64,000 bases of DNA from positions 124,001-188,000 of the IMG/VR virus record IMGVR_UViG_3300042544_001590. One strand, 5' to 3'. Both the position numbers and the translations under genes were made by a program. The notes below the pieces were generated by a model that worked only from the letters and a program-made list of their open reading frames with translations, made no database searches and had not been told where the DNA came from. This document shows positions 1,361 to 61,775 of this stretch, piece by piece (the first letter of the stretch is position 1; every line of letters begins with the position of its first letter).

Positions 1361-1756
1361 TCATTTCACTCCCCAAGATGTTCCATTAAACCACTCATGT
1401 CCCGATGGGTTATTCAGCGTTGCTTCCCTACGTTTGAAAGGTTCCGGTTGAACGGGTTGTTGCGCGATTTGTTCAGCCTTCAATCTTTCAATTGATTCTC
1501 TTTTCATTCGCTCCATTTCACTATCAATTTTATTGATTTCTTCTTGGTATTCTTCGGTTGTTAAATATTCACCAAAAAGAGGATACCAATCTCTTCCAAC
1601 CAATACATCATCATCGTCATTGTTTACAGAACTGACATGGGAATCATCTTTAAGATCATCCGTTTCGTCCGTTGTTGTAAACCTGAAATTCTCATCCTCC
1701 TGTGCTTTGATTTCCACTTGCATGATAGGATTTATGGAGACGTTTAGGAATGTCAA
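1361..1756 (-). CDS. hypothetical acidic protein
   Basis: 131 aa ORF tightly packed in minus-strand cluster. Confidence 0.55.
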   Translation of the reverse strand: MTFLNVSINPIMQVEIKAQEDENFRFTTTDETDDLKDDSHVSSVNNDDDDVLVGRDWYPLFGEYLTTEEYQEEINKIDSEMERMKRESIERLKAEQIAQQPVQPEPFKRREATLNNPSGHEWFNGTSWGVK

Positions 1757-2460
1757 GGAATTGATATTTGTTCAGTGGAAGGATTATAAATAAAATGTTG
1801 TAAAGTCCGTTGTAAAGTCCCATTATTATTAGTTAATATATATACGTCCACATTTATAGTACCATCTCGATTATTTCCAGTAATTTTAATACTTCCCACA
1901 GTATTATAACCAGCATCTTCCAATGCATACCTAATTTGGTCGGTGCTGGAAGCAAGCTGTCTGTCTGGTCCTCTAACTCTTTTAGCTGTCCTAGTTTTCG
2001 GATCAAATTTAACAATATATGTCGATTTATCAGCAGAGTATGTTCTACCCAATTTAGGATCACCCGTCTGTGGATCATTTACCAACTCCCCCACTTTAAT
2101 GGTTGCGGTATATGTCCCATCAGCGTTTCGTTTCGGATTCCAATTGAGCTTTTCACCTCGCTCTTCGTGGAATCCATCTTCATGAATGTAATCCAATGTA
2201 ATTTGATCTTTAGTCATTGAAGCCCTTTGACCTTTTTCAGCGGCATTTCTTCTCCATTCCGTTCCTTTCCTTATAGGATTCATTATTTCCGGTGCTACCG
2301 TATCAGCAATGGAACCAGCCCAAGATAATGCTTTAGTAGTATTTGGAAATTTTTTTATTAATTTTTCCTTCCCCTTTCCGATATTATCCATAATACCGCT
2401 TGCAGTAAAATTATTCCAAAATCCCTCGGAAAGTAAATCTTTTTGACTGATTTTATGCAT
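1753..2460 (-). CDS. hypothetical protein, putative head-internal
   Basis: 235 aa ORF; N-terminus ...DLLSE-G resembles prohead-protease processed leader. Confidence 0.65.
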   Translation of the reverse strand: MHKISQKDLLSEGFWNNFTASGIMDNIGKGKEKLIKKFPNTTKALSWAGSIADTVAPEIMNPIRKGTEWRRNAAEKGQRASMTKDQITLDYIHEDGFHEERGEKLNWNPKRNADGTYTATIKVGELVNDPQTGDPKLGRTYSADKSTYIVKFDPKTRTAKRVRGPDRQLASSTDQIRYALEDAGYNTVGSIKITGNNRDGTINVDVYILTNNNGTLQRTLQHFIYNPSTEQISIP

Positions 2461-2911
2461 CGGTTGCTAGGTGTTGGTCTGCCACATTTCGCAATGCAAC
2501 GTCGATGAGAGCATCAAGCTCATTTTTTATAAATCCCTTCCCAATTAAAACCTTATGATCGTTGTCCGCTCTATTACCAATTGAAAATGGTGTGTTTGGA
2601 AATTTCTTACCGCCAATCATACAATCAAATAAACAGATTGGACGTTCCTCCGTATTACCAGCCCCGAGATTGATGGTGATGGTATCTTTGACTGGTTTTT
2701 CTAAGCGTATGGAATTCATGGTTGTAAATCTTACTATGGGTTGGTTTGTTTGGCGATCTTTTCCGAATTCAAGGTCTTCCCCGTGTAAAACATTGTAAGC
2801 ACCATTACCCGTATCCAATTTGGCGGATATGGTTCCAACACCATCAACTATGATGTCCTCTTCCAAACCGAGGATGTTTTTTTCCACAAAGAATTGCTTG
2901 AAACTTCTCAT
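2453..2911 (-). CDS. retropepsin-like aspartic protease (RimK-associated 'ATP-dependent zinc protease' type)
   Basis: Catalytic-type AKLDTG motif and C-terminal FSIGNR...VLIGKGF pattern typical of this family. Confidence 0.75.
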   Translation of the reverse strand: MRSFKQFFVEKNILGLEEDIIVDGVGTISAKLDTGNGAYNVLHGEDLEFGKDRQTNQPIVRFTTMNSIRLEKPVKDTITINLGAGNTEERPICLFDCMIGGKKFPNTPFSIGNRADNDHKVLIGKGFIKNELDALIDVALRNVADQHLATDA

Positions 2912-2915
2912 TCAT

Positions 2916-3182
2916 TTAAATTACTGGTTTTTCATTAACATCAACACCCATGCTTTCGTAAATTCGTTTCACGTTTCTATGTGCGGATGAAATCTCCCCA
3001 ATGTTTGGGAATTTTGGTTTAGGTTTATCAGGAGTGCTATGGAACATTGAATAATTATTAATTGTTTTTATCATATGTTCAATCATGTGTTTGGAATCCA
3101 TTAGAAGAGACAAATGATCTTGAGAAGAATCTGTTTTCAAAGATTCCCACATGATTTCATTTTCTTCTAATTTTGATATCAT
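2916..3182 (-). CDS. hypothetical protein
   Basis: Likely start MISKLEENEIMWES at 3182 within tracked ORF 2916..3320; N-terminus resembles the neighbour's EENAVLWES. Confidence 0.55.
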   Translation of the reverse strand: MISKLEENEIMWESLKTDSSQDHLSLLMDSKHMIEHMIKTINNYSMFHSTPDKPKPKFPNIGEISSAHRNVKRIYESMGVDVNEKPVI

Positions 3183-3192
3183 ATTAAAATTG

Positions 3193-3645
3193 TTAGTAGT
3201 CGTCGGCTTGTTCAAAACCAGTGTTGGCGAAATCTGCCTTGGCATCCAGACGATGCCAAACATCGGAAACATATGTGGATGCAATCGTGATGGCGGAAAC
3301 CATCCAATCCTCAAATTCACATTCGTTTTTCATGTCATACAAACGATCTGCGTATTCAGCGAGTTTTTTCAACTCTGCCACAAGAACTTCATTAACTTCA
3401 TGCTTCTCGACATGACCAACTGGTTCAATTTCCATAACCATTCCATGTGCTTCAGGCTCATCGTCGTCACCGAAGTCATCGTCGTCACCAAAATCTGGCA
3501 TCATTCCATAATCATCATCGTCATCAAAATCATCACCCATATCATCACCAAAGTCATCATCCATCTCGTCATCGAATCTTTTGTTCATAACTCCACTACG
3601 GAAAGATTCCCAAAGCACGGCATTTTCTTCTCCTTTGAATTTCAT
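3193..3645 (-). CDS. acidic hypothetical protein, putative head-internal
   Basis: Asp-rich; C-terminal EDWMVSAITIASTYVSDVWHRLD recalls a segment common in large myovirus proteins; TAAATA-N5-ATG. Confidence 0.7.
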   Translation of the reverse strand: MKFKGEENAVLWESFRSGVMNKRFDDEMDDDFGDDMGDDFDDDDDYGMMPDFGDDDDFGDDDEPEAHGMVMEIEPVGHVEKHEVNEVLVAELKKLAEYADRLYDMKNECEFEDWMVSAITIASTYVSDVWHRLDAKADFANTGFEQADDY

Positions 3646-3653: not shown

Positions 3654-4055
3654 TTAGTCCATCTGATCTAAATTATCCCGAATGTCCTGTCCTTGTTGTG
3701 CGGGACGGATGATTGGGAGGACTTTTGATTGATATAAATCCTTGGCGGTCTGTCCCGATGCTTGGATTTTCTTGATATTATCAGGTCTGCGTAGTAAATC
3801 TAAGATGTTTTCCAGAGCGATGCGATCAGTGCCGCTAGGAGGTTCCATGAGAGCCGCCAGAACCACATCCTCCATGTATCGGATTTCAGCGGGAGAACTC
3901 AGGGGGATCGTCTCCGCTGGCTCTTCTGGGGGCATCTCAGGTGCAGGAGCTTGACCTTCTTGGGGTGCCTGTTCCATACCAGCTTCAGGATTTTGTTCAT
4001 CCTGTTCCAGAATGGATTGATATCTTTCGATAAGTTGTAAGGTTTTTGATTTCAT
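3654..4055 (-). CDS. hypothetical protein
   Basis: ORF MKSKTLQLIERYQSILEQ...; packed cluster. Confidence 0.65.
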   Translation of the reverse strand: MKSKTLQLIERYQSILEQDEQNPEAGMEQAPQEGQAPAPEMPPEEPAETIPLSSPAEIRYMEDVVLAALMEPPSGTDRIALENILDLLRRPDNIKKIQASGQTAKDLYQSKVLPIIRPAQQGQDIRDNLDQMD

Positions 4056-4056: not shown

Positions 4057-4503
4057 TTAAACAACGTTAAATTTCTTCGTTTTGGATTTTTGAACTGCTT
4101 TTTTCAAGCTATCAGTATTTCTTTTATATGCGTCAATCGCTTGTCCAGCAACATTTTCACGTTCTTTTGCAACCCTTTTGGCTTTTTGAGCTTTGGTCAT
4201 AGCAAGTGGCCCAAGATTCGGTAATGAAGACTTGGCACCAAGTTTTTCAACTTCAGAATCAATATCATATGAACCAACCGTTTGTTGTTCTTCCTCTGGG
4301 AGATCACCCATATCTTGACGGGCTTGCATACCCACAGCTTCCAGAATGATATCCCCTTGTTCAGCATGAAGGATGATTTGGGAACCTTTGGAACTGAATG
4401 GAACTTCCTGTTCATATAGGAAGAATTTTGCCTGAAATGCGGCATCCATCTTGGATTGGTTCGCAGGATCGTGTTGTTCAAGAATCTCAAGAAATTTGCT
4501 CAT
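4057..4503 (-). CDS. hypothetical protein
   Basis: 148 aa ORF with TAAATA-N5-ATG. Confidence 0.7.
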   Translation of the reverse strand: MSKFLEILEQHDPANQSKMDAAFQAKFFLYEQEVPFSSKGSQIILHAEQGDIILEAVGMQARQDMGDLPEEEQQTVGSYDIDSEVEKLGAKSSLPNLGPLAMTKAQKAKRVAKERENVAGQAIDAYKRNTDSLKKAVQKSKTKKFNVV

Positions 4504-5894: not shown

Positions 5895-6140
5895 TTACTT
5901 CCGAACACGCTTTTTCTTCCGCTTTTTACCCGATTTCGCGCTCAGTCGCCCACTTCTCGTGCTGATTCCCAACCCATACGGATTTCTGGCATCCCCCGGA
6001 GCAAACCAATCCGTGTTTTCAATTCCAGCATGTCCAGCAATATCACCCCCGAACGCACCTCCGCTTGTCATATCCTCATTCAACATGGTTTGATAAATAT
6101 TAGCAATTTCAATCTTGTCATTGACAAAGGGATGGTTCAT
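5895..6140 (-). CDS. small protein with basic C-terminal tail
   Basis: Start MNHPFVND at 6140 (TAAATA-N5-ATG); ends KSGKKRKKKRVRK. Confidence 0.65.
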   Translation of the reverse strand: MNHPFVNDKIEIANIYQTMLNEDMTSGGAFGGDIAGHAGIENTDWFAPGDARNPYGLGISTRSGRLSAKSGKKRKKKRVRK

Positions 6141-8579: not shown

Positions 8580-8845
8580 TCGAACGTAGTAAGGAAGACA
8601 TTCAAAAGATCGTTGAAAAGTGGAGTTATCTTTTAAATGCACCGTTATCTGGTAACAAAACAGCAATGTTGATTGAATCACAAGAAAAAACATATACGCT
8701 GGATCAGGTAATAGAAAGTATTGAAGATAAAGTGTTTAAACAATATGTTGAAAATTTCAAGCACGACAATGATCATTATAATCCCGATGGATATATTTCG
8801 GTTTTAGTCAAACATCACATTAACAAACACAATATCAATTTATGA
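8576..8845 (+). CDS. small accessory protein
   Basis: GTG start with AAGGAGGT upstream; coupled on both sides. Confidence 0.6.
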   Translation: MIERSKEDIQKIVEKWSYLLNAPLSGNKTAMLIESQEKTYTLDQVIESIEDKVFKQYVENFKHDNDHYNPDGYISVLVKHHINKHNINL

Positions 8846-9291
8846 CAGAAAAAAATGCCAAGAAACCACATTATGTTAATTCCAAGCTGTTCAAACAGCA
8901 ATTGGTGGAATACTATGAGACGGGAGCAAATCTGGACGAATTGGGAGTTCATCTGATGAACATTGCAGAGGGTTTGTCATATAAAATTAACTTTATTAGA
9001 TATTCTCAAAGCTGGAAATCTGAAATGATCGGGGATGCAGTTCTGAAAATGTATGCGGCTCTGGAAAAGAAATTGTATAACATCGAATCAGACTTCAACC
9101 CATTCTCATATTTCAACCGCATTGCTTGGAATGCTTTCTGCAACCGCATCAAGAAGGAGAACGGACAACACAAGGGTCTGGAGGACTACAAGGAGATGGT
9201 GTATATGGAAAGCATGAGTGGGCCAGATTCCATGGGACATGTTTACGTGAAACCGAATTTGGAGGGGGATGAATATGATGACAATGATTAA
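8842..9291 (+). CDS. gp55: late-transcription sigma factor (T4 gp55-like)
   Basis: HYVN...NIAEGLS..NFIRYS..EMIGDA...NPFSYF..IAWNAF.NRIKKE pattern; position between UvsW and gp47. Confidence 0.88.
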   Translation: MTEKNAKKPHYVNSKLFKQQLVEYYETGANLDELGVHLMNIAEGLSYKINFIRYSQSWKSEMIGDAVLKMYAALEKKLYNIESDFNPFSYFNRIAWNAFCNRIKKENGQHKGLEDYKEMVYMESMSGPDSMGHVYVKPNLEGDEYDDND

Positions 9292-12935: not shown

Positions 12936-14129
12936 ATGTTTCAAAAGTCTCCGTTTCCATCTCCTTTTGCTAAGAATCCCTATGCTGTAAAAAACACCAC
13001 CCAAGAACCCCCTAAAAAGGGCAACACTTATTTAAACTTCGGAGCCGATAGAGGGGGTTGTGGACAATGGCGCATAGGTTGGCCTGAATTACATATCAAT
13101 ATGTGTGGATTGGGGGATTCTTCCACCATTACCAAGATGGTTCTCAACAAGGATTGGTATCGGGATGTGAAAACCATCAAGCTCCAACGCCAATGTTCGA
13201 CTCAACAGAAAGAATTCTTTAAATTTCTCAAGAGTATCCAACCAGAATGCGGTTTCAAAATCATCTATGAAGTGGATGATGTGGTATTCCACGAAGAGAT
13301 TCCCGATTACAATTCCTACAAACACGCATTTGCTTCCGATGAGATTCGCCAGAACTGCGTGGACATGATGAACATGGCAGATGAGGTGACGGTGACATGT
13401 AAATACATGCGCGATCTTTTCATTGAGAAAACAGGACAACAAAAGACTTCCGTGATTCCCAACTTCCCTCCCGAATGGTGGATTGGTTCTCATTACAATT
13501 ATGGGAAGGTTATCCAGAACTTTGATAGGAACAAGAAAAAGCCGCGCATCCTCTATTCAGGATCGGGAGCGCACTTTGATGTGAAGAATGTCACGGGACA
13601 GCAAGATGATTTTTCCCATGTCCTGAAATTCATCATCGATAACCGTCATAAATATCAGTTCATTTTCATTGGTGCTTACCCACCTCCCCTGCATCCATAT
13701 ATCGAAAGTAAGGAAATAGAATTTCATCCATGGCAATCCCTGATGGATTATCCGAAGTTCATTGCTTCTTTGAATCCCCAATTGCTTCTTGCACCCCTGA
13801 AGGATATTCCGTTCAACAGGTCAAAGTCTGATATCAAATATATTGAGGGAGCTTGTTTGGGTATCCCCTGTATGGTTCAGGATATGGTGACGTATCAGGA
13901 TGCTCCCGATTTCCTAAAATTCACGGATTCCACCGATTTGGAACAGAAAGTGGAGACAATTCTGAATTGGAAGAACCGTTTCAAGTATTACAAGCTGGTT
14001 CCCGAGTTGAGAAAGCTTGGGGAAAGCAGATTCCTTGAAAGACCGGAGAATATCGGAGCGTTTATGGAAGCCCTGAATACACCATTCGGTGATCCTTCTC
14101 GCAGATTCATGAAATATTGGAATGATTAA
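12936..14129 (+). CDS. glycosyltransferase (GT-B-like, phage type)
   Basis: IIYEVDD, ADEVTVT, LAPLKDIPFNRSKSDIKYIEG patterns. Confidence 0.75.
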   Translation: MFQKSPFPSPFAKNPYAVKNTTQEPPKKGNTYLNFGADRGGCGQWRIGWPELHINMCGLGDSSTITKMVLNKDWYRDVKTIKLQRQCSTQQKEFFKFLKSIQPECGFKIIYEVDDVVFHEEIPDYNSYKHAFASDEIRQNCVDMMNMADEVTVTCKYMRDLFIEKTGQQKTSVIPNFPPEWWIGSHYNYGKVIQNFDRNKKKPRILYSGSGAHFDVKNVTGQQDDFSHVLKFIIDNRHKYQFIFIGAYPPPLHPYIESKEIEFHPWQSLMDYPKFIASLNPQLLLAPLKDIPFNRSKSDIKYIEGACLGIPCMVQDMVTYQDAPDFLKFTDSTDLEQKVETILNWKNRFKYYKLVPELRKLGESRFLERPENIGAFMEALNTPFGDPSRRFMKYWND

Positions 14130-14407
14130 TTCTTACCAAATTGGGAATATTGAGCGAGCGTTGGGCGGAGCCTTTCAAACATACCTTTTAAGTTTTCAAA
14201 GCTATTCATATTCGAAGGATTATTGAAAAAGGCTTTTTTATTGTTTTGGTAAAAATTGATAGTTCCTTTTAGATAATTTTCAATATACGAACAAAGTTCA
14301 TGCGCCTTTGCCTTGACTTTTTCTGTCTGTGGGTCATAATCATCGTAGGATGATTCCATATCAAGATTTTCGTAAATCATACTCAAGTCTTTGAAATAAT
14401 TATCCAT
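14126..14407 (-). CDS. hypothetical late protein
   Basis: TAAATA-N5-ATG; N-terminus YFKDLSMIYEN. Confidence 0.65.
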   Translation of the reverse strand: MDNYFKDLSMIYENLDMESSYDDYDPQTEKVKAKAHELCSYIENYLKGTINFYQNNKKAFFNNPSNMNSFENLKGMFERLRPTLAQYSQFGKN

Positions 14408-22215: not shown

Positions 22216-22226
22216 GATTCAATTTA

Positions 22227-23876
22227 TCACTCATTCAAAAACAACCAATGAGCATAATTTATGGGTTTTTTAAATCCACGATCTCTATACTCTCCGATGT
22301 TGTTGAGATGTCTGTCTTTATTGACCTGTTCGGTCATGTAACCCATGACACCTTCTTCATCTTCGGGATTATCTTTTTTGAGTTTGATTAGATATTTGGA
22401 TATGGCATCAATTTTTTCATAATCTGGATCATCATCATCCATCATTTCTCTTAATTTTTCTTCAATTTCTGGTGCCGACAATCCAGCAACTTCACCTTCA
22501 ATATTAATCTTCGGTTTCTTTACACCCTTTTCCTTTAATTTTTTTTCAGCTTCCCATTTCTTACCTCGTTTTTCATATTCTCCTTGACGAATCATTCTCG
22601 CGTCTTCTCTAGATTGAGCTTTTTCAGCCTTTTCATCATCTCTTGAAGATTTACTCACTATTGATAGTTTAAGTTTCGATAGAATATTTCTCCAGTTTGA
22701 TAATATTCCACTTTCTTCGTCAGTTATAATCCCCTCATTAACCAAATCATCCAGAAGACCATCATCCAAAGTATCATATACAGATTGATATCTGTCTTTC
22801 TTGAGTAGCATTTCCGCTTCGTTTTGGTATGAAGAAGTCTTTAAATTTCTTTTATAATATTTTAAAACCACTCCACCCGCATTACCCATAACATTAATTA
22901 TAAATTTTTGAATTTTTTCATCGGTGATGTCTTGATTAGATTCAATACGAGCCTCAATATTTCTCAGTACTTCATTAAATGTTGCTTGGGGGGTATTCTT
23001 CAACAAGTCTCTTTCATATTTGATGTTTTCTTGAGTGTCTAAACCCACACCTCTCATCTCTTCATCATTATCTTTATTCAAATTTGCAATTTGTTGTTTA
23101 TATGAAATCAACTGTTTTAGAGTATCCCTAAATATAGTAAGGGGAGTGTTGTTATCAACATCGAGTTCTGGTTGAACGAAATTTGTATCGGCATGATAGA
23201 TAGACGAAGTTATACCTTTTGGTAATTTTTTAGATTTTTTAAGTTTTTGAATTATTGAACGGGCTTTATTTTGAATAATATAAGCCTCTTCCATACTCAT
23301 ACCAAACATTTCTTCTTTTTTTGCTGTTGTTCCATATGCGAAATTGGAGCTTCCTCTTTTTTGGAAGTGCTTATCAGCATAATCATAAATATTTTTTTGA
23401 TTTAATAATTTTTTTGCAAATTGCTGGGACAACGCAATTTCTGGATACGCTTTCACTATCAATCTCAACATAAATTCTTGTTGTAATTGTGTATTATCTG
23501 CATTTTTTGGAGCAAATTTAGCATATTCGGGTGTATATGCTCTTGTTTTTCTACTTCCTATTCTTTCTTCCGGCGTGAGTGGTCTGATTGCTAAATCTTG
23601 AACACTTTGGTCAAACCCAACACTTTTATTAATTCCAATCTTTGCAAGATTCTCCGCAGATAAAAAATTGAATAAAGATTTGGTCACGTATTCCAACCTT
23701 CTATGTCCGAGAGTTGGGCTAGGTGGTGCTTTTGGGTGTCCTTTCATTATTCCCTGCACCTGTAAATATAAATTTTCAAAGTCTGGAAATTCATTTCTCC
23801 AAAAGGGACTAAATCGAGCCATTTCGTTCAATACCTGCACTTTTTCCACTAGATAATCAAAGCCGTAATTTCTCAT
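22227..23876 (-). CDS. large hypothetical late protein, putative head-internal
   Basis: TAAATA-N5-ATG; N-terminus ...VLNE-MAR. Confidence 0.7.
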   Translation of the reverse strand: MRNYGFDYLVEKVQVLNEMARFSPFWRNEFPDFENLYLQVQGIMKGHPKAPPSPTLGHRRLEYVTKSLFNFLSAENLAKIGINKSVGFDQSVQDLAIRPLTPEERIGSRKTRAYTPEYAKFAPKNADNTQLQQEFMLRLIVKAYPEIALSQQFAKKLLNQKNIYDYADKHFQKRGSSNFAYGTTAKKEEMFGMSMEEAYIIQNKARSIIQKLKKSKKLPKGITSSIYHADTNFVQPELDVDNNTPLTIFRDTLKQLISYKQQIANLNKDNDEEMRGVGLDTQENIKYERDLLKNTPQATFNEVLRNIEARIESNQDITDEKIQKFIINVMGNAGGVVLKYYKRNLKTSSYQNEAEMLLKKDRYQSVYDTLDDGLLDDLVNEGIITDEESGILSNWRNILSKLKLSIVSKSSRDDEKAEKAQSREDARMIRQGEYEKRGKKWEAEKKLKEKGVKKPKINIEGEVAGLSAPEIEEKLREMMDDDDPDYEKIDAISKYLIKLKKDNPEDEEGVMGYMTEQVNKDRHLNNIGEYRDRGFKKPINYAHWLFLNE

Positions 23877-23912
23877 ACTGTTATTTAGTCATAATAATTA
23901 AATAATGTTATG
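23874..23912. promoter_or_regulatory. bidirectional late promoter cassette CAT-N5-TATTTA-N11-TAAATA-N5-ATG
   Basis: Direct reading; same geometry recurs at 40374, 60227 and nearly at 56590. Confidence 0.7.
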
Positions 23913-24641
23913 ATTTCATTCTCACAATACTTTCTAATCAAAGAAGCGTTTGATACTGTCACCGAATTCATGTTAAATCCTGAAAATTCAGATAAGGATT
24001 ATGATGAACTTATTGCAGAATTCGAGGCATCAGGTGGGGAGGTCATCGGTTCCGGTTCGTTTGGTATCGTGTATTCCCATCCTAAGTGGCCGTATGTTCT
24101 AAAGGTTTTCTCTTGGGATGATCCTTACTTAAAATTCGCTAGATATGCTCACGATAATCCTCATCCATCTTTTCCCAAATTCTTCGGCAAACCACAAAGA
24201 GTAGTCCCCCAATTCACACGATACAAGGACGAAGCAAAACAATATTTGGCTAGAATTGAAAGGCTTAATCCGACTCCTGTTAATGTTTTGGGACTAATAG
24301 ATAATAATCTGATGCTTTATTTTCATTTGAAAGAAAATCCTAAATTAATACAAGATAGGACACAATTCATGAAATTGTCTTCCAAAGTTAAATCTTTACC
24401 AAAAGCTGTTTATAATCTGTTGGAAGGATGGTATCTGCTCCGCAGAGATTTACCTGATCTGAATCCCGATTTACACGGAGATAATGTGATGATGCGAGAT
24501 GATGGTCAATATGTTTGGGTTGATCCGGTCTGGACAGGAGATGAGAATATTGATAATCCTCTGACTGCCGCTATGACATCCAAGGATTACGAACCTAGTA
24601 ACATGCTTAAAGGAGGGAGAACAAAGTTGACTTCCCGATAA
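23910..24641 (+). CDS. protein kinase-like protein
   Basis: Gly loop IGSGSFGIVY, VLKVF lysine, catalytic DLHGDN, WVDP. Confidence 0.8.
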   Translation: MISFSQYFLIKEAFDTVTEFMLNPENSDKDYDELIAEFEASGGEVIGSGSFGIVYSHPKWPYVLKVFSWDDPYLKFARYAHDNPHPSFPKFFGKPQRVVPQFTRYKDEAKQYLARIERLNPTPVNVLGLIDNNLMLYFHLKENPKLIQDRTQFMKLSSKVKSLPKAVYNLLEGWYLLRRDLPDLNPDLHGDNVMMRDDGQYVWVDPVWTGDENIDNPLTAAMTSKDYEPSNMLKGGRTKLTSR

Positions 24642-24654
24642 GACATGGTAAGGT
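24627..24654 (+). promoter_or_regulatory. TTGACT-N16-TAAGGT promoter, 6 nt before ATG
   Basis: Direct motif match. Confidence 0.55.
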
Positions 24655-24660
24655 AATTCC

Positions 24661-27229: not shown

Positions 27230-27253
27230 AAAACAATTTTACTAAATAATTAA

Positions 27254-27751: not shown

Positions 27752-27765
27752 TAGTGTCCTTTGTA

Positions 27766-27793: not shown

Positions 27794-27799
27794 TCCTAC

Positions 27800-35399: not shown

Positions 35400-36048
35400 A
35401 TTTGATGAATTGTATGAACAGGTGATTATTGAAAGTGGTCTTTCAAGAGTATGGAGAAAGATTCAAAATCATTCTTCTGGCACCATCACGGCTTTTAGGG
35501 GTGATGTCCCATATCAGCAGAATATTAGAAATAATAAAAAGATACTTGCTTATCTACAATCTAAAGGATATTCGGTGACATCTATTATGGGGACATACAT
35601 TGAAAATTTTAGAGATGAAGAAAAAAAGGAGGAGATTCACGCTAGAAATGCTGGAGGTGATCCATATGATCCCGAAGAAAGACATGTTCAAGAAAGATCA
35701 TTTTTAGTAGTAAATGATAGGGTGGAAGGTGATGATGGTGGTAAATTGGCGCACGATCTTTTTAAATTGGGGGTAGCTTTTGATCAGGATTCGGTTATGA
35801 TTATTCCCGTTGGTGGTAATAACGCATATCTGTGGGGAACATCCAAAAGAGAAGAATCGTATCCCGGTTACAATATCAAAGCTCCAGTTGGTAGTGGTAA
35901 ATATGGAAAAACATCAGGAGCATTTTTATCTAAGATTAAGGGGCGAGAATTCGCGTTTGAGGCTATCAAATCACCACAAACCATAAATGGCAAGCGTGGT
36001 CAAATGATTTCGTTGAAAGAAGTTAAGAAACAACTCAATGAAATATAA
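35389..36048 (+). CDS. hypothetical protein, putative head-internal
   Basis: MKNKFDELYEQVIIE-SGLSRV...ITAFRG...E.SFLV...DQDSV pattern. Confidence 0.65.
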   Translation: MKNKFDELYEQVIIESGLSRVWRKIQNHSSGTITAFRGDVPYQQNIRNNKKILAYLQSKGYSVTSIMGTYIENFRDEEKKEEIHARNAGGDPYDPEERHVQERSFLVVNDRVEGDDGGKLAHDLFKLGVAFDQDSVMIIPVGGNNAYLWGTSKREESYPGYNIKAPVGSGKYGKTSGAFLSKIKGREFAFEAIKSPQTINGKRGQMISLKEVKKQLNEI

Positions 36049-39633: not shown

Positions 39634-39966
39634 ATGGAAATTGAAATTTTTGACCAACAAATTATTCAAAAAAAGTGGAAAAATTATGATGCTCATACGC
39701 AAGATTATTTACCACATATTGGTTACGGTGCGTCTGGTACATATGACTCTATAACAAAAAAGGGAACGATTAGATCGTATATGAAAAAATGTAAGGAACT
39801 TGAAAAGGCAGGTTACAAAAATTTAAAATTTTGTAACGGGGGCGATGACGACTGGTTGGTGGTAGATCACGATGCCAAAGAATTTGGATTTTTTGAAGAT
39901 TACGCTCCCTCTTTAGAAAGGGCTGTGAAATTTGACAACCTCACCACACTTTGGAATAATCATTGA
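39634..39966 (+). CDS. hypothetical accessory protein
   Basis: 110 aa ORF. Confidence 0.6.
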   Translation: MEIEIFDQQIIQKKWKNYDAHTQDYLPHIGYGASGTYDSITKKGTIRSYMKKCKELEKAGYKNLKFCNGGDDDWLVVDHDAKEFGFFEDYAPSLERAVKFDNLTTLWNNH

Positions 39967-40376
39967 GACTTTTTAGCAGTCATAAACGATTGTTGAAGAG
40001 CAGCAAGATCAGAAGCAATGCGACCAATCTTCACTTGTTGATTCTTCAGATTGCCCAACATCGACTCAGGATTGGCGGTAGCCAGAACGCTCTGAATGCT
40101 GTTTGGTTGATCACCATTGAGATAACCAAGGAACTTATCAATATTTGCATTCCACTTATCAACAACACTAACCATTTGCTCATTCTGACGAGCCATAGCA
40201 TCCCCAATCTCATCAACAGCGGATGGATCAACTTCCATATCCACATCATAATCATCCATGGCAACATCGTCGTCTAAGGACATCTCAGCAGCATCGCGCT
40301 CCAAATCAGGATCGATGTCAAGTTGGGGAGCTTCTTGGAGAATACGGAGGAATTTAGCGTGGAATTTATTAGCCAT
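39960..40376 (-). CDS. acidic late protein, putative head-internal
   Basis: TAAATA-N5-ATG; N-terminus ...ILQE-A. Confidence 0.7.
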   Translation of the reverse strand: MANKFHAKFLRILQEAPQLDIDPDLERDAAEMSLDDDVAMDDYDVDMEVDPSAVDEIGDAMARQNEQMVSVVDKWNANIDKFLGYLNGDQPNSIQSVLATANPESMLGNLKNQQVKIGRIASDLAALQQSFMTAKKSQ

Positions 40377-56592: not shown

Positions 56593-56630
56593 TGTTATTA
56601 TTTAGGAGGATGATATTAAATAATCATATG
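56590..56630. promoter_or_regulatory. bidirectional late promoter cassette (variant spacing)
   Basis: CAT-N6-TATTTA-N12-TAAATA-N5-ATG. Confidence 0.6.
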
Positions 56631-57908
56631 GAATTTGATAAGCTGTATCGTGAATTGATGTTGGAGTTCTCGGAAGGAGCGATCCGTAACATTGTGAAGA
56701 AATTCCAAAACGATGCCACGGAACAAGAAATCCGTAGAGAGGTTCAGGATTTTGAAAAGTATAAGAACGCTTTACAAAAGAAAGACCCTTTCCAATATAA
56801 ATCGTGGATAGAGTTCACGGAAGCGATCCATGCTGCAAAGGGTAAGGCTGAATTTAAAAGGAAAAAAGCACCAACCCAAGATGTTGTTGCCAATCAGGAT
56901 GATATCATAGCCGATGATGAGAACGTGACCATCTATCGGGGAGATTCCCAAGACAAGTGCGTGTTATATGGAAAGGGTTATTCTTTCTGTATCTCAAGAC
57001 AGGTTGGAGGTAATATGTTCTCTAACTATCGTTTGGGTAAAGAATCTACATTCTATTTCATATATTTCAAGAAGAAACCGAAGAGTGCGGTTGACCATAT
57101 TATGGTGTTGGATCATACCAAGCATGGGTATGAATGGACTTTTGCCGATAATGATACTAAAAAGGTGAATGGTGGGTGGGATGAGGTGGTGGGTAAATAT
57201 CCAGAATTAAAGAAATATGAAAAATTATTAGTTAATAAAAAGTTGGATGATGAAGAGAGTGAATTTATAAAAGTGTTAAAGAATTTTTCTAAAAATCCAA
57301 GATTAGAAAATTTTAATAAATTCTCTTATGAACAAAAAGCACAAGCTCTTAAAAGTGTTGTTGATTTAAGTGATCAAATATGGAACGCTTTAGATTCTAC
57401 TTTGAGAAATGAATTTTTGAGCATAGGTCCAAATTTAACAAAACATCAAGCATTTAATCTTAAACCTAATGAAATTGAACGGTATAAAAAAACAAGAAAT
57501 CTTTCCAGACAACATTTAATTGATGATTATAAATATAAGGAAAATATATTTGATTTTTCAGATGATGAAAGATTGGCATTGGAGTATATGGAAAAAGTTG
57601 GAAGTTCAAAATTTTTCAAAGATGATAGATTATCTAATAAAAAATTAAAGTTTGAAACATCTAATGATTATGAAAGGTCTATTTATGACTTGGTTTTTGA
57701 TGAAAACGGTGCATTAGTGACATATCAAAATATTGTAAGAGATGTTTTTGGGGGGAATCCAGATGATGTTTTATACATAAAGTATGATACGAATGGAAAT
57801 ATTATTAATATTGAATCAAGCTATGATGATATTGAAGATACTTCAAATTATAATGAATCTATCCATTTTGATAAATATTATCAAAAGATAATGTCAAGTC
57901 TCTTTTAA
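56628..57908 (+). CDS. hypothetical late protein, putative head-internal
   Basis: MEFDKLYRELMLE; KCVLYGKGYSFCISR recalls a PcfJ-like motif; AT-rich 3' half. Confidence 0.65.
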   Translation: MEFDKLYRELMLEFSEGAIRNIVKKFQNDATEQEIRREVQDFEKYKNALQKKDPFQYKSWIEFTEAIHAAKGKAEFKRKKAPTQDVVANQDDIIADDENVTIYRGDSQDKCVLYGKGYSFCISRQVGGNMFSNYRLGKESTFYFIYFKKKPKSAVDHIMVLDHTKHGYEWTFADNDTKKVNGGWDEVVGKYPELKKYEKLLVNKKLDDEESEFIKVLKNFSKNPRLENFNKFSYEQKAQALKSVVDLSDQIWNALDSTLRNEFLSIGPNLTKHQAFNLKPNEIERYKKTRNLSRQHLIDDYKYKENIFDFSDDERLALEYMEKVGSSKFFKDDRLSNKKLKFETSNDYERSIYDLVFDENGALVTYQNIVRDVFGGNPDDVLYIKYDTNGNIINIESSYDDIEDTSNYNESIHFDKYYQKIMSSLF

Positions 57909-58390: not shown

Positions 58391-60229
58391 TTACCAATTC
58401 TTGCAGCTTTCGGCTTTGGGGGTTCCGGGTTTCGCTTTATCGCAACCATGTCTTGCTCGAAATGCTTTCTTTCTATCAGTGTTTCCACTATCACCAGTTG
58501 CTTTCACACCTTTTTGTCCAAAATGGATTCTTTTATAACCCGAACCATCGGGGTCTTTTACACATTTAGTATATTTTTTACCCTTACGATCACTGGATGC
58601 TTTTTGAGTAACTTTGGTGCATTTCTTGGATTTTTCTAAGAACACGGCAACTTCCTGAAGATCAATCATGAAGTCGTTGATATCAACATTGAAAGATGAT
58701 GCGTATTTGTTTGCCAATTCATCAAAGGATTCGTTCACCGTTCCTTCATCTCTCATTCCTTGCACGGTGGACAACAATTGCGTTGCACTGTTAGCACCAC
58801 TTCTGGTTATAGACCAAAATCCCTTGAGTCGTGAATTGATAATATCCTTGGATGTTTTATTAAATGGTAAATTCTTGACAAGTTTCTTTAATTCTGGGAT
58901 GGCGGCATTCCATTGATCCTTTGACTTGATTTCTTCCAATTTCTTGATGAACTCTTCCATTGCCATATAACGGGGATCAACATCCAAATTCTCCAAAGGA
59001 ATGGTTTTTCTTTCCATACCTCGACCCGCAATGGAATTGAAGAATTTTTGTAATGATTGTGCTGGAAGTTCTCCGACTCTCCGCATCACTCCAATGTTTA
59101 TGTTGCGATTCAATGTGCGGGGATCAAAATTTTCCAATCCTCTATCGAATCGATTTACATGATAATCAATAAATGAAAATATGGGATTATCATCAGTTGT
59201 TAATTTTTTCAATAATCCCAATTTATAAAGAAAATCTGTTTTATTAACATTTAAAAAATCAACCCCGGTGGGTATTTCACTATCTGATATTCCATGCTCT
59301 ATTTTTAACATATCCAATATCCCTGCTGCTTTGTTGTTGATTAAACTTTTCACCTTCGCCAATACAGTATCATTGGATTTCATATTGTTGGATGTTTTTG
59401 TTTCTATTTTTGAATTTATTTCTTCAAATCGTTCATCCGCAGCGTTTGAAGCCTTTATAGCATTTATCAATTTTTTTTCAGCATCTTCTAATTTACTTTG
59501 AACGGAAGATAATTTTTTAACATCTTGTAAAAGAATAGATAATTCTATCTCCGCTTGCTGGATTTGACCGCTTAGGGTTTCCTTTTTTTCTTTAATCCTA
59601 GTATTCTTTTTTTCGGTTTTTTTTCTTTGGATAAAGGATTTGATTTGATCGATTCTATCACTACCATATAAAGAACTATCAAGAATTTCTTTGAGTCTAT
59701 TCACTTCGTCTCTCGCATCCGAAGCTTGTCCCGCTCTTTTTTGTTGAGAGACGAGAGCATTATTCCACTCTTTTTCATTATCATCATTTATAGTATCTAT
59801 TCTTAATCCTCCTACCAGTTTAATTTTACCATCTATATCTTCTTTCTTTTCACCGCTGTATATTTTTTTAAAATCTTCAAAGAATGTTTTGGAATTGAAT
59901 AGGATTGCAAAAGCATTAGCCATTTCTCTATCTCGCGCAGCTTTCAATTCATAGGTATCCTGTTGACTAACACCTTTGGAGGTGTCATAAAGATATTTTT
60001 TCATCTGATCTATTGGTTTTTGCTTTTCAAAATTGTCAACTTTGCCAACAGGACTGGACGAATAACCAGAGGAAGTTGATGCTCCAGCAACTCCCCCATC
60101 GGCTGTAATACCAGCTTGTTGCCCACTGATATTCTGTGGTCCTATATTTCGTTGCGCCCTAAAATACGCATCTCCCCCGCGAGTTCCCTTTGCTTCCAGC
60201 GCCAAATTATATAAATCATCAAAGTTCAT
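58391..60229 (-). CDS. large late protein with basic Cys-containing C-terminal domain
   Basis: TAAATA-N5-ATG; C-terminal KRIHFGQKG...RKKAFRARHGC...SCKNW. Confidence 0.7.
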   Translation of the reverse strand: MNFDDLYNLALEAKGTRGGDAYFRAQRNIGPQNISGQQAGITADGGVAGASTSSGYSSSPVGKVDNFEKQKPIDQMKKYLYDTSKGVSQQDTYELKAARDREMANAFAILFNSKTFFEDFKKIYSGEKKEDIDGKIKLVGGLRIDTINDDNEKEWNNALVSQQKRAGQASDARDEVNRLKEILDSSLYGSDRIDQIKSFIQRKKTEKKNTRIKEKKETLSGQIQQAEIELSILLQDVKKLSSVQSKLEDAEKKLINAIKASNAADERFEEINSKIETKTSNNMKSNDTVLAKVKSLINNKAAGILDMLKIEHGISDSEIPTGVDFLNVNKTDFLYKLGLLKKLTTDDNPIFSFIDYHVNRFDRGLENFDPRTLNRNINIGVMRRVGELPAQSLQKFFNSIAGRGMERKTIPLENLDVDPRYMAMEEFIKKLEEIKSKDQWNAAIPELKKLVKNLPFNKTSKDIINSRLKGFWSITRSGANSATQLLSTVQGMRDEGTVNESFDELANKYASSFNVDINDFMIDLQEVAVFLEKSKKCTKVTQKASSDRKGKKYTKCVKDPDGSGYKRIHFGQKGVKATGDSGNTDRKKAFRARHGCDKAKPGTPKAESCKNW

Positions 60230-60265
60230 ACTATTATTTAGAACAAATGACTAAATAATCCTATG
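60227..60265. promoter_or_regulatory. bidirectional late promoter cassette
   Basis: CAT-N5-TATTTA-N11-TAAATA-N5-ATG. Confidence 0.7.
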
Positions 60266-61030
60266 GGCAAGAAATTTGATGCTATCTATGAAGCTGTTGT
60301 GAGTCGTTCCGAAGTGGGGGGTTATCTTCCCGGCGATATCATAAAATTTAGGGATGGATATAAAAACACGGAAACTTACAAGTATATGCCATTCACTCTC
60401 AGGAAAGAAGTGGATGAATTGGCGACTTGCGGATTGAACATCAAAGTCGTTCAGGTTGGAGACAAACAATCAGGATATTCCATTGGAAATCAATTCAAAC
60501 CAGCATCCCAGATCGTTCTCACCATTGCTGCTGATCATGGTGGTGGTAGAACTTATGGTAGAGTGGTTGTCTGTCCCGCCATGGTTGATATGGTGGATGT
60601 GAGCGCAGGAGTTCCGGTTCCCGATCAATTCAAGCGCAAGGATACTGTCATCATCAAGCCCAAACCCTTAAAAATTGATCCAAAGATCATCACCAATGTC
60701 ACTGACAAGGGAAATGGTAAGAATACCCCCACCGATCTGAAATTGGCGGGAGAATCCAAGGCTTGGGAATCCACCAAGGAATTGGCTGATTTGTATATGG
60801 AATCTTTGGGGGAGGTTCCCCTGAGAAATATGCCTCCAGAAAAATCTTTAGGGGAGGTTCCTCGGCGTGATCCGAACACACAACCCCCAACAAAAAACAG
60901 ATTGAATTTGCTTTATGATAGATTACCAGAACTTAAAAAAGCTATAGAAGATGTGAGGTATGGTTCTTTTAAAGAGTTCTATAACAAAATTTCAGAGTTT
61001 AAGGATTTTCTTGATAACGAGTTTGTTTAA
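60263..61030 (+). CDS. hypothetical late protein
   Basis: 255 aa; internal duplication SLGEVP x2. Confidence 0.7.
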   Translation: MGKKFDAIYEAVVSRSEVGGYLPGDIIKFRDGYKNTETYKYMPFTLRKEVDELATCGLNIKVVQVGDKQSGYSIGNQFKPASQIVLTIAADHGGGRTYGRVVVCPAMVDMVDVSAGVPVPDQFKRKDTVIIKPKPLKIDPKIITNVTDKGNGKNTPTDLKLAGESKAWESTKELADLYMESLGEVPLRNMPPEKSLGEVPRRDPNTQPPTKNRLNLLYDRLPELKKAIEDVRYGSFKEFYNKISEFKDFLDNEFV

Positions 61031-61058
61031 AAATAACAATCAAATAATAAATAACATC

Positions 61059-61775
61059 ATGGCACAATATAATAACAAAGATCAGCGCAATCTGGAAGAA
61101 CTCCTTGAAGAAGGGTGGATGGATCGTCTCAAGGCACGGGGAGCCGAAGCTTTGGGTTCCGTCAAAGGAGTGGGGCAACAAATCAAAGGTGGCTTTCAAC
61201 AAGCTGCTGGCAGTGGCTTGAGTAAGGCTGGAGATTGGCTTGAAAGCGATAAGATTTCTCGTAAAGGGGATAAATACACGCAACAAGGTCAAAAAAGTGA
61301 GCGAGAAGGAAGCGTCTCTGGTCACAATGCCAAAGTCCAGTATCTTCAGAAGAATATTGACAAACGTATTGACTCATTTGTTGCCGATATCAAAAATGAT
61401 ATTAAAAAGCTTGGTCTGGACATTGGTAACATTGAAATCGTGTCTGGTATCAATGCTGCTCTTGGACAACTCAAGAAAAGCGTGAGCGGTGCAACACCTC
61501 CTCCTTTACCACAACAATCTGGCGCAACACCTCCTCCTTTACCCCAACAATCTGGCGCAACACCCCCACCACTTCCAAAACAACAAACACCGGAGCCAGA
61601 AGAGGATGAGCCGGAAAATCCCGTGGAATACTCTTACAGAAAAGCTATTAGTAGGAAGAAAAAAACACAACCAAACACTAATCCCCGTAAAAGTAAGGTG
61701 AGAAAAGACCCATTTGCAAAATATGCCGCTCCCGAACAGGAAGAGGATTTGGACAAGATGTTTTGGGAACGCTAA
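61059..61775 (+). CDS. hypothetical late protein with Pro-rich repeats
   Basis: Start MAQYNNKD by TAAATA-N5 rule; GATPPPLP(Q/K)Q x3. Confidence 0.7.
   Translation: MAQYNNKDQRNLEELLEEGWMDRLKARGAEALGSVKGVGQQIKGGFQQAAGSGLSKAGDWLESDKISRKGDKYTQQGQKSEREGSVSGHNAKVQYLQKNIDKRIDSFVADIKNDIKKLGLDIGNIEIVSGINAALGQLKKSVSGATPPPLPQQSGATPPPLPQQSGATPPPLPKQQTPEPEEDEPENPVEYSYRKAISRKKKTQPNTNPRKSKVRKDPFAKYAAPEQEEDLDKMFWER
61488..61586 (+). repeat. 33-bp coding tandem repeat x3
   Basis: gg(t/c)gcaacacc...ccacaacaatct units. Confidence 0.8.

What the first reader, a model, noticed from the sequence alone, without database searches (positions are those of the whole stretch)
1753..61775. About 20 unrelated late proteins share a T4 internal-protein-like N-terminal leader ending (I/L/V)-x-E
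Seen: short amphipathic N-termini such as MISFSQYFLIKE-A (23910), MRSFKQFFVE-K (2911), KFDELYEQVIIE-S (35389), FDKLYRELMLE-F (56628), FDDLYNLALE-A (60229), YFKELGLIYENILLE-A (27254), FHAKFLRILQE-A (40376), MSKFLEILE-Q (4503), DLLSE-G (2460), EENAVLWE-S and EENEIMWE-S (3645, 3182), VQVLNE-M (23876), EELLEE-G (61059). Established: T4 internal proteins carry a capsid-targeting leader (MKTYQEFIAE) that prohead protease gp21 cleaves after Glu in I/L-x-E. Inference: a large repertoire of head-packaged, possibly ejected cargo, apparently including enzymes.
Basis: partly seen in the sequence, partly recalled or inferred. Interest (0 to 1): 0.6.

Follow-up and report, generated by a model that had tools for sequence, protein, structure and literature searches.

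The report
Capsid-targeting leaders on many phage proteins
A lake-water relative of phage T4 puts a short T4-style "pack me into the head" tag on about 19 unrelated late proteins in this window (about 30 genome-wide), among them a kinase, a SAM lyase, an ADP-ribosyltransferase-like enzyme and a protease, so it probably injects ready-made enzymes with its DNA; no experiment has shown this yet.

Summary
The window is bases 124001-188000 of a complete 207-kb T4-like phage found in lake metagenomes. Its polymerase and capsid protein are only about 30% identical to any cultured phage.

**Observation.** All the quoted N-termini are present at the stated coordinates. I count 19 such genes in the window and about 11 more elsewhere.
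- The bodies of the proteins are unrelated by BLASTP.
- Most of the genes sit 5 nt behind a TAAATA late promoter.
- The signal above chance is an aromatic/hydrophobic helix, F/Y at position 4 and F/Y/L/I at positions 7-8. It occurs in 10 of 54 late genes, 0 of 56 early genes and 1.8% of internal windows.
- A bare [LIV]-x-E ending is at chance level.

**Support for the T4 reading.**
- Positions 4, 7, 8 and 10 are the ones that T4 mutagenesis mapped for targeting and processing.
- The genome encodes a gp21-type protease, a gp55 late sigma factor and a scaffold rich in [LIV]-x-E sites.
- The leaders lie outside the known domains.
- Leader residues are kept through synonymous codon changes.
- Leaders are more conserved than the protein bodies (76% against 56%).

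**Cargo.** It includes a protein-kinase fold, a SAM-lyase family member, a retropepsin-like protease, an ADP-ribosyltransferase fold and a CCA-type nucleotidyltransferase.

**Limits.** Packaging, cleavage and ejection are inferred only. One cultured-phage homologue was not seen in a low-sensitivity virion proteome.

**Verdict.** The finding is real and is best read as an expanded variant of the T4 capsid-targeting system.

The parts
1753..2460 (-). 235-aa protein, weak leader MHKISQKDLLSE|G, last but two in the w4503 late operon
   Evidence: The motif alone is at chance level. Residues 2-16 are 60% identical to the G1 orthologue against 22% for the rest. No Pfam or PHROG family.
2453..2911 (-). 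152-aa retropepsin-like protease with a class I leader MRSFKQFFVE|K
   Evidence: PF05618 covers residues 14-146, which is profile 2-137 of 138, so the first 13 residues are an add-on. 43 distinct IMG/VR homologues down to 51% identity; all with a called ATG start keep the F-x-x-[FY]-[FI]-x-E-K leader.
2916..3182 (-). 88-aa protein, N-terminus MISKLEENEIMWE|S
   Evidence: Shares the EEN-x-x-x-WES N-terminus with its upstream neighbour. No orthologue in G1.
3193..3645 (-). 150-aa very acidic protein (pI 4.1), N-terminus MKFKGEENAVLWE|S, own late promoter
   Evidence: The acidic run resembles the T4 core proteins gp67/gp68. The N-terminus is 80% conserved in G1.
3654..4055 (-). 133-aa acidic protein, N-terminus MKSKTLQLIE|RYQSILE|Q
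   Evidence: N-terminus 80% against 67% for the rest.
4057..4503 (-). 148-aa protein, class I leader MSKFLEILE|Q, late promoter; first gene of a cluster that looks like an internal-protein locus
   Evidence: Fits the strict T4-register pattern. Promoter. N-terminus 80% against 61% for the rest in G1.
5895..6140 (-). 81-aa basic protein (pI 10.3) with a long leader ending MLNE|D, late promoter
   Evidence: Orthologues in G1 and G4.
8842..9291 (+). gp55-type late sigma factor (context: reads the TAAATA promoters)
   Evidence: phrog_234, E 2e-23.
14126..14407 (-). 93-aa protein, class III leader MDNYFKDLSMIYENLDME|S, late promoter
   Evidence: Best-scoring pair of N-termini between unrelated proteins, with w27254..
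22227..23876 (-). 549-aa protein, leader MRNYGFDYLVE|K, late promoter, divergent from w23910
   Evidence: N-terminus 93% against 48% for the rest in G1. No family, PDB or Atlas match.
23910..24641 (+). 243-aa minimal protein-kinase fold with class I leader MISFSQYFLIKE|A, late promoter
   Evidence: G47, G49, K65, D187, N192 and D205 are invariant in 15 sequences. AF2 model pLDDT 74. All top Foldseek PDB hits shown are protein kinases, E 2e-4, prob 1.0. Weak hit to phrog_15752, protein kinase. Absent from G1.
27254..27751 (+). 165-aa protein, class III leader ending ILLE|A, late promoter
   Evidence: A relative keeps IYENILLE|A behind a different start.
33680..34279 (+). 199-aa protein, class I leader MRPFYDFYLE|K, late promoter
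   Evidence: Fits the strict T4 register. The G1 orthologue reads MKTFYQFFWE|A. The GNAT hint is not significant, E 0.06. phrog_2563, function unknown.
34581..35399 (+). 272-aa protein, class IV leader MKDDLNIRELYQKIIEE|R
   Evidence: The ATG follows GAGGAGG. G1 orthologue. No family.
35389..36048 (+). 219-aa SAM-lyase-family protein, class II leader MKNKFDELYEQVIIE|S
   Evidence: PF23780, E 1e-9, 38.7 bits against a cut-off of 28. Of 81 homologues, 77 have a variable 5-25-aa leader ending x-x-E|S(S/G)LSR, with P3 = L 40, I 23, V 8, M 5, F 1. Absent from G1.
39960..40376 (-). 138-aa acidic protein (pI 4.1), leader MANKFHAKFLRILQE|A, late promoter
   Evidence: N-terminus 67% against 32% for the rest in G1. 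Orthologue also in G4.
56628..57908 (+). 426-aa protein, class II leader MEFDKLYRELMLE|F, late promoter, inserted between baseplate genes in the opposite orientation
   Evidence: Absent from G1.
58391..60229 (-). 612-aa basic coiled-coil protein, class II leader MNFDDLYNLALE|A, late promoter, upstream of a gp25-like baseplate gene
   Evidence: N-terminus 93% against 43% for the rest in G1. C-terminal DUF5754 is borderline. Its position in the operon leaves a tail role open.
60263..61030 (+). 255-aa protein, class II N-terminus MGKKFDAIYE|A, late promoter
61059..61775 (+). 238-aa basic protein, weak leader ending LEELLE|E, late promoter
   Evidence: The motif alone is weak. N-terminus 80% against 42% for the rest in G1. 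Contains three tandem proline-rich repeats.

Best explanation
The leaders are capsid-targeting propeptides of the T4 kind.

Proposed mechanism:
1. The genes are transcribed late by the gp55-type sigma factor from TAAATA promoters.
2. The short N-terminal amphipathic helix, with an aromatic at position 4 and aromatic or hydrophobic residues at 7-8, docks the protein onto the scaffolding core while the prohead assembles.
3. The gp21-type protease then cuts after the Glu that ends the leader, and the mature protein stays inside the head.
4. Most of these proteins would leave with the DNA at infection. That would deliver ready-made enzymes before any phage gene is expressed: kinase, SAM lyase, ADP-ribosyltransferase-like, protease and CCA-type nucleotidyltransferase.
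5. A subset of small, very acidic leader proteins more likely acts as core or scaffold components that are degraded and expelled.

Shown here: the shared motif, its link to late promoters, its modularity and conservation, the presence of protease, scaffold and late sigma factor, and the cargo folds.

Inferred: targeting, cleavage, retention and ejection.
For: - Genome context: gp21-type protease PF03420, E 6e-27. gp55-type late sigma factor. MCP, portal and gp4 homologues. The scaffold has 14 [LIV]-x-E sites, 4.7 per 100 aa against 1.66 background; T4 gp22 has 7.4. The protease itself starts MLKLKLIAE|N, like T4 gp22 MLKEQLIAE|A.
- Fit to T4: the T4 leaders were read from the T4 record. T4 mutagenesis maps targeting to CTS residues 4 and 7 and processing to residues 8 and 10 (PMC9026906). 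Six gene starts here fit that register, at a background of 9e-4 per window, or about 0.3 expected.
- Enrichment: 10 of 54 late genes, 0 of 56 early, 1.8% background.
- Peptide-level selection: codons at the conserved leader residues vary.
- Conservation: N-terminal residues 2-16 are 76% identical against 56% for the rest in 16 orthologue pairs (14 of 16 pairs, Wilcoxon 3e-4). The excess is +0.20, against +0.06 and -0.09 in two control sets (Mann-Whitney 0.007).
- Modularity: the leader precedes complete known domains. Both AF2 models place it as a separate helix at residues 4-12.
- Spread: in the SAM-lyase family 77 of 81 homologues carry different leaders that all end hydrophobic-x-E|S. Most of the 28 ART-fold relatives, including distant ones, start with M-K-I-x-x-L-L-x-E-R type leaders.
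- Turnover as at T-even IP loci: 11 of 32 candidates, including the kinase, SAM lyase and ART-fold protein, are absent from a complete relative. A 98% relative has an extra leader cassette.
- Precedent: reviews state that diverse T-even internal proteins share only the CTS (PMC3012670).
Against: - There is no virion proteome, N-terminal sequence or expression data for this phage or a close relative, and no RNA run holds it.
- Gene 5-9 of Campylobacter phage vB_CcoM-IBB_35, a homologue of the SAM-lyase-like cargo with a 29-aa leader, is not among the 38 virion proteins found by gel-band MS. That method also missed gp3, gp15 and gp51.
- A single T4 leader used as a BLOSUM probe does not separate late from early N-termini.
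- A PSSM trained on leaders of three outside families separates them only modestly: 14 of 53 against 7 of 56.
- No gp67, gp68 or gp22 homologue was recognised by PHROGs; the scaffold is assigned by position and composition.
- One tail protein has a look-alike N-terminus.
- w58391-60229 sits in a baseplate operon.
- The complex prediction of protease with a leader gave no verdict.
Confidence: 0.6

Rival explanations
1. The leader does target proteins to the prohead core, but these proteins are mainly assembly-core or scaffold components. Like T4 gp22, gp67 and gp68, they would be degraded and expelled before DNA packaging, so they are not ejected cargo.
For: Six candidates are small and extremely acidic, pI about 4.1: w3645, w4055, w40376 and genome 67712, 95055, 192185. 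That resembles T4 gp67/gp68. No recognisable gp67/gp68 homologue exists, so something must fill that role. Some candidates have several internal hydrophobic-x-E sites.
Against: Several candidates are folded enzymes with intact catalytic motifs: kinase, ART fold, SAM lyase, protease and nucleotidyltransferase. A scaffold role does not explain these. They are accessory between relatives, whereas core components should be conserved.
Confidence: 0.15
2. The N-terminal helix is a tag for something other than the capsid interior and is not removed. It could mediate membrane or assembly-site association, incorporation into the tail or baseplate, or oligomerisation.
For: Amphipathic N-terminal helices serve many purposes. 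w58391-60229 and w56628-57908 lie among baseplate genes. A tail sheath stabiliser has a similar N-terminus. The Campylobacter-phage homologue was not detected in virions.
Against: The Glu at the end of the leader and the hydrophobic residue at P3 are conserved across families, 77 of 77 in the SAM-lyase family. That points to a processing site. The register equals the T4 CTS determinants. A gp21-type protease is present.
Confidence: 0.15
3. The shared N-termini reflect RNA or translation constraints of leaderless late mRNAs, or recent duplication of promoter-plus-start cassettes. On this view they are not a protein signal.
For: Late promoters sit exactly 5 nt from the ATG, so the transcripts are probably leaderless. 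One promoter-plus-N-terminus duplication exists, at genome 88866 and 90706.
Against: Early genes have the same leaderless layout and none has the motif. Codons at the conserved residues differ: F is TTT or TTC, L uses six codons and S five. Operon-internal genes that have no TAAATA promoter of their own (w34581 has a clear ribosome site) carry the leader too: w2911, w34581, w35389. The leaders are conserved as peptides across relatives down to 51% identity.
Confidence: 0.04
4. Chance resemblance among AT-rich gene starts.
For: The bare [LIV]-x-E ending is at chance level, and several of the quoted examples rest on it alone.
Against: Enrichment statistics, conservation above that of the protein bodies and recurrence in independent families from other phages.
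Confidence: 0.02

Closest known systems
T4 capsid targeting sequence (CTS) of internal proteins IPI, IPII, IPIII and the propeptide of Alt
   Same: A propeptide of about 10 residues at the extreme N-terminus. Aromatic at position 4, aromatic or hydrophobic at 7 and 8, Glu at about 10. Late expression. A gp21-type protease in the genome. Attached to otherwise unrelated, fast-turning-over proteins. One cargo is an ADP-ribosyltransferase-like enzyme, as Alt is.
   Different: About 30 candidates per genome instead of about 4. The leaders fall into at least four sequence classes of 9-22 residues. P3 is often F, Y or M. The cargo is not small basic DNA-binding proteins: it ranges from 81 to 612 aa and pI 4-10 and includes a kinase, SAM lyase, protease and nucleotidyltransferase. 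The genes are scattered as single late cassettes among replication genes. The phage is only about 30% identical to any T4-like isolate in polymerase and MCP.
Head proteins of phiKZ-like and SPN3US-like jumbo phages processed by a T4-type prohead protease
   Same: Many head-internal and ejection proteins carry propeptides that a gp21-related protease removes after Glu, giving a large protein payload (abstracts of PMC5694885, PMC7411985 and PMC10052503).
   Different: Those phages are a different lineage with an inner body or bolus, and their propeptides are long and varied rather than a short common N-terminal tag. A jumbo-phage cleavage motif with a small residue at P3 is my recollection, not checked here.
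Early takeover enzymes of T7 and T3 (gp0.7 protein kinase, T3 SAM lyase)
   Same: The same kinds of activity are predicted: a protein-kinase fold with a weak match to the PHROG of the T7-type kinase, and the Pfam SAM-lyase family.
   Different: In T7 and T3 these are the first genes expressed after entry (my knowledge). Here they carry late promoters and a packaging-type leader, so they would be made in the previous host and delivered as protein.

Membership tests
T4-type capsid targeting sequence | Short propeptide at the extreme N-terminus, outside the folded domain | tested here: met
   PF05618 starts at residue 14. The ART core starts at about residue 15, after helix 4-12. The kinase leader is a separate helix at 4-12. 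The SAM-lyase family has variable leaders before a conserved junction.
T4-type capsid targeting sequence | Targeting determinants at residues 4 and 7, processing determinants at residues 8 and 10 (Glu), as mapped in IPIII | tested here: met
   Definition from PMC9026906. The exact register is met by w2911, w4503, w33680 and genome 6535, 68943, 192883. Classes II-IV keep the aromatic/hydrophobic spacing and the terminal Glu in a shifted register.
T4-type capsid targeting sequence | gp21-type prohead protease and a cleavable scaffolding core in the same phage | tested here: met
   PF03420, 91 bits. Also present in 4 of 5 related records. The scaffold has 4.7 [LIV]-x-E sites per 100 aa against 1.66 background, but no PHROG names it.
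T4-type capsid targeting sequence | Late expression together with head genes | tested here: met
   Sequence level only: the TAAATA + 5 nt promoter is shared with virion genes and a gp55 homologue is present. No transcript data exist.
T4-type capsid targeting sequence | Protein found inside virions with the leader removed after Glu | not testable with these tools
   The phage is uncultured. The only related published proteome, vB_CcoM-IBB_35, does not list the homologue.
T4 internal proteins proper (IPI, IPII, IPIII) | Small, basic, DNA-associated proteins homologous to the T-even IPs | tested here: not met
   No Pfam or PHROG match to internal virion protein families was returned for those scanned. 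Sizes are 81-612 aa and pI 4.1-10.3. They share the tag, not the family.
SAM lyase family (PF23780) | Pfam model above the gathering score | tested here: met
   38.7 bits against 28, but only profile positions 2-53 of 133 align. Nearly all of the 81 homologues carry the precomputed PF23780 label. Catalytic residues and activity were not tested.
Protein-kinase-like fold | Gly-rich loop, VxK lysine, catalytic D-x4-N loop, metal-binding Asp, bilobal fold | tested here: met
   The residues are invariant in alignment A2. All top Foldseek hits shown are kinases, prob 1.0, with TM only 0.30-0.37. No Pfam kinase model matches.
ADP-ribosyltransferase fold (H-Y-E type) | ART fold with conserved His, Tyr and Glu | tested here: inconclusive
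   H20, Y57 and E96 are invariant in 28 sequences. The AF2 model has pLDDT 88.5. All top 50 VIA-align hits are ART folds, but the best Z is only 8.3 (Tpt1) and Foldseek E is 0.03 or weaker.
Retropepsin-like protease (PF05618) | Full-length Pfam match and the D-T/S-G motif | tested here: met
   33 bits against 27, profile 2-137 of 138. DTGNG or DSGNG is kept in all homologues.

The most novel reading that the evidence does not exclude
This phage lineage carries a pre-made, multi-enzyme takeover and anti-defence kit inside the capsid: kinase, SAM lyase, ADP-ribosyltransferase, protease, tRNA-repair-type nucleotidyltransferase and about 20 proteins of unknown function. Every item is addressed by a portable tag of roughly 10-20 residues and the items are swapped between close relatives. 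If so, the tag would let the set of injected proteins of uncultured T4-like phages be read straight from metagenomes.
Probability: 0.4. Interest if true: 0.75.

Novelty: new variant of a known kind. Interest (0 to 1): 0.62.

Why it matters
Which proteins a phage injects with its DNA is known for only a handful of model phages, yet these proteins act first against host defences. If the leader is a packaging tag, it flags about 30 candidate injected proteins in one uncultured lake phage, and hundreds of family members in metagenomes.

Activities known elsewhere as early-expressed takeover functions, kinase and SAM lyase, would here be delivered as protein. That would be a different strategy against restriction and other immediate defences. 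The tag is also a candidate natural tool for loading foreign proteins into capsids beyond T4.

Tried and rejected
- Plain [LIV]-x-E in the first 20 residues: not enriched.
- T4 IPII/III and IPI leaders as BLOSUM62 9-mer probes: early genes score as well as late ones.
- PSSM trained on leaders of three outside families: only modest separation, 14 of 53 late against 7 of 56 early at the 95th control percentile.
- Paralogy among the cargo: none at BLASTP 1e-3.
- Megablast of 25 kb against cultured phages: no match. tblastn of the protease-like cargo against cultured phages: no match.
- Pfam and PHROGs: no family for most of the cargo. The GNAT hint for w33680 is E 0.06 and not used.
- PDB sequence search of four large cargo proteins: nothing.
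- ESM Atlas for w22227-23876: nothing usable.
- Word-based homologue search for the ART-fold protein: one hit only. The exhaustive representative search was needed.
- Complex prediction, protease homologue with the first 40 residues of the SAM-lyase-like protein: no verdict, score 0.00. This is not evidence either way.
- Published virion proteome of Campylobacter phage vB_CcoM-IBB_35: homologue gene 5-9 is not listed.
- No paper found for Microcystis phage Mel-JY01.
- Sequencing runs: only DNA holders, no RNA.

Full report
**What the window is.** The window is bases 124001-188000 of a 207,489-bp virus record with direct terminal repeats. The record encodes T4-type core genes:
- gp43-like DNA polymerase, about 30% identical to cyanophage and pelagiphage enzymes;
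- MCP, about 33% identical to cyanophage gp23;
- portal, gp4 and a head-tail adaptor;
- baseplate gp6- and gp25-like proteins;
- UvsX, gp41, gp32 and gp44-like replication proteins, and a gp55-type late sigma factor;
- a gp21-type prohead protease, PF03420, E 6e-27, at genome 108892-109554.

Near-identical DNA occurs in lake-water and freshwater metagenomes from more than ten studies. So this is an uncultured freshwater phage, a distant member of the T4 superfamily.

**Promoters.** Two motifs lie at a fixed short distance from start codons. TAAATA + 5 nt + ATG precedes the portal, protease, scaffold, sheath, baseplate and terminase genes and about 50 genes in all, so I read it as the late promoter. 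AAAACTAG...ACAAT + about 6 nt + ATG precedes about 56 or more small genes in the early region. These two sets gave me an internal contrast.

**Check of the observation.** All the quoted peptides are at the stated coordinates. I count 19 leader-type genes in the window (see the parts list) and about 11 more elsewhere, for example at genome 6535, 67712, 68943, 71798, 76574, 76607, 81972, 95055, 192185 and 192883.
- After removing 25 N-terminal residues, 28 of the candidates gave no pairwise BLASTP hit, so the protein bodies are unrelated.
- The pattern M-x(1-5)-[FY]-x-x-[FYLI]-[FYL] occurs in 10 of 54 late-promoter genes, 0 of 56 early-promoter genes and 1.8% of internal windows (Fisher 5e-4, binomial 4e-8).
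- In a complete 197.7-kb relative (G1) it occurs in 8 of 58 late genes.
- N-terminal 10-mers of late genes resemble one another more often than internal segments do: 19 pairs against 0 at a score of 22 or more.
- '[LIV]-x-E in the first 20 residues' is as common in early genes and in internal windows.

**Comparison with T4.** I read the T4 leaders from the T4 record itself:
- IPII and IPIII start MKTYQEFIAE|A.
- IPI starts MKTFKEF.
- Alt starts MELITELFDE|D.
- gp22 starts MLKEQLIAE|A.

A review of the T4 mutagenesis reports that targeting depends mainly on CTS residues 4 and 7 and processing on residues 8 and 10. It also says the CTS may be a general way for T4-like phages to load varied proteins (PMC9026906). 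An earlier review says T-even internal proteins share only the CTS (PMC3012670). A pattern written from those four positions has a background of 9e-4 per window, or about 0.3 expected per genome. It fits six real gene starts here, plus one tail protein. The other leaders keep the aromatic/hydrophobic spacing and the closing Glu in shifted registers; I grouped them into classes II-IV.

A single T4 leader used as a scoring probe does not separate late from early genes. An independent PSSM separates them only modestly. I report both as limits of the signal.

**The signal is a peptide signal.**
- Codons at the conserved leader positions vary freely.
- Early genes share the same leaderless layout but lack the motif.
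- Operon-internal genes that have no TAAATA promoter of their own carry the leader.
- In 16 orthologue pairs between this phage and G1, residues 2-16 are 76% identical against 56% for the rest (14 of 16 pairs, Wilcoxon 3e-4). The excess of +0.20 exceeds that of other late proteins (+0.06) and early proteins (-0.09) (Mann-Whitney 0.007). This holds for the weak-looking examples tested, at w2460, w3645 and w61059.

**The leader is modular.**
- w2453-2911 is a 13-residue leader followed by a complete PF05618 retropepsin-like domain. 43 distinct homologues, down to 51% identity, were found; all with a called ATG start keep the leader.
- w35389-36048 belongs to the SAM-lyase family PF23780. In 77 of 81 homologues a variable leader of 5-25 residues ends x-x-E just before a conserved S-(S/G)-L-S-R. 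P3 is L, I, V, M or F in all 77, and L or I in 82%. That is the published T4 protease preference (my knowledge, consistent).
- The 276-aa protein at genome 68113-68943 has invariant H20, Y57 and E96. Its AF2 model has pLDDT 88.5, with the leader as a separate helix. Its structural neighbours are all ADP-ribosyltransferase folds, with Tpt1 best at Z 8.3. Most relatives, including distant ones, start with a leader of the M-K-I-x-x-L-L-x-E-R type.
- w23910-24641 keeps every catalytic motif of protein kinases, and its top structural matches are all kinases.
- Genome 76607-78133 is a CCA-adding or poly(A)-polymerase-type nucleotidyltransferase with an HD domain. It follows an N-terminal extension of about 50 residues that begins with a class I/II leader.

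**Protease substrates in the head module.** The protein placed where gp22 lies has 14 [LIV]-x-E sites, 4.7 per 100 aa against 1.66 background; T4 gp22 has 7.4. The protease homologue starts with a gp22-like L-I-A-E|N. PHROGs does not name the scaffold, and I found no gp67 or gp68 homologue. The very acidic leader proteins are candidates for that role.

**Turnover.** Of the 32 candidates, 21 have orthologues in G1. The other 11 do not, and these include the kinase, the SAM lyase, the ART-fold protein and w56628. G1 and a more distant partial genome (G4) have leader-bearing late genes of their own. A 98%-identical relative has an extra 141-aa leader cassette between the w23876 and w23910 orthologues. 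This resembles the polymorphism of T-even internal-protein loci.

**Evidence against, and gaps.** Nothing shows packaging, cleavage or ejection.
- The SAM-lyase-like family has homologues in cultured T4-like phages of Alishewanella, Paraglaciecola, Campylobacter and Microcystis.
- For Campylobacter phage vB_CcoM-IBB_35 a virion proteome exists. The homologue, gene 5-9 (24.2 kDa, 29-residue leader ending F-N-E|S), is not among the 38 proteins detected. The method used gel bands and also missed gp3, gp15 and gp51.
- The complex prediction gave no verdict.
- w58391-60229 heads an operon with a baseplate gene, so a tail role is not excluded.

**Conclusion.** It is not new in kind, because the CTS principle is established. 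It is an expanded variant in a very distant lineage, with several leader classes and enzyme cargo.

Noticed in passing
whole genome; e.g. window 4503, 23876/23910, 27254, 40376, 56628, 60229: Both promoter classes sit so close to the ATG that transcription should start at or next to the A of the start codon: late is TAAATA + 5 nt, early is ...ACAAT + about 6 nt. Most mRNAs of this phage would then be leaderless, without a Shine-Dalgarno site. Some operon-internal genes do have GGAGG.
   Followed up: partly
window 23876/23910, 40376/40410, 56592/56628, 60229/60263; genome 76574/76607: Five back-to-back divergent late promoter pairs of the form CAT-N5-TATTTA-N8-10-TAAATA-N5-ATG. The two start codons lie only about 30 nt apart.
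   Followed up: partly
genome 88866(-) and 90706(-), outside the window: The promoter and the first 20 or more codons of the 380-aa head-tail adaptor gene are duplicated as a 45-aa remnant ORF about 1.8 kb away.
   Followed up: no
L094:2554-2976(-), a 98%-identical relative: An extra 141-aa late gene with its own promoter and a leader ending EILEE|G lies between the orthologues of w23876 and w23910. This is cassette gain or loss between near-identical phages.
   Followed up: partly
window 568-1359(-): A 263-aa ATPase with AAA_21/AAA_15 matches (the ABC/SMC-like ATPase family of AbiEii type). It is the last gene of the operon that holds six leader proteins.
   Followed up: no
window 61059-61775(+) and 42952-43437(-): The w61059 protein contains three tandem copies of an 11-residue proline-rich unit. 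The w42952 protein begins with Thr/Ser/Pro-rich repeats.
   Followed up: no
genome 95648-96727(-), outside the window: The tail sheath stabiliser (phrog_227) begins M-N-D-Y-S-Y-F-F-E-N. This fits the strict leader pattern although the N-terminus lies within the conserved family region. It is either a false positive or a tail protein that uses the same tag.
   Followed up: partly
genome 81667-81972(-), outside the window: A leader-type gene starts with GTG exactly 5 nt behind a consensus late promoter, and the G1 orthologue does the same. A non-ATG start on a presumably leaderless mRNA is unusual.
   Followed up: no
window 22001-28000: Near-identical DNA is held by lake-water or freshwater metagenome runs from 14 different studies at a word share of 0.2 or more, two of them marked as possible sources of this DNA. 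No RNA run holds it.
   Followed up: no
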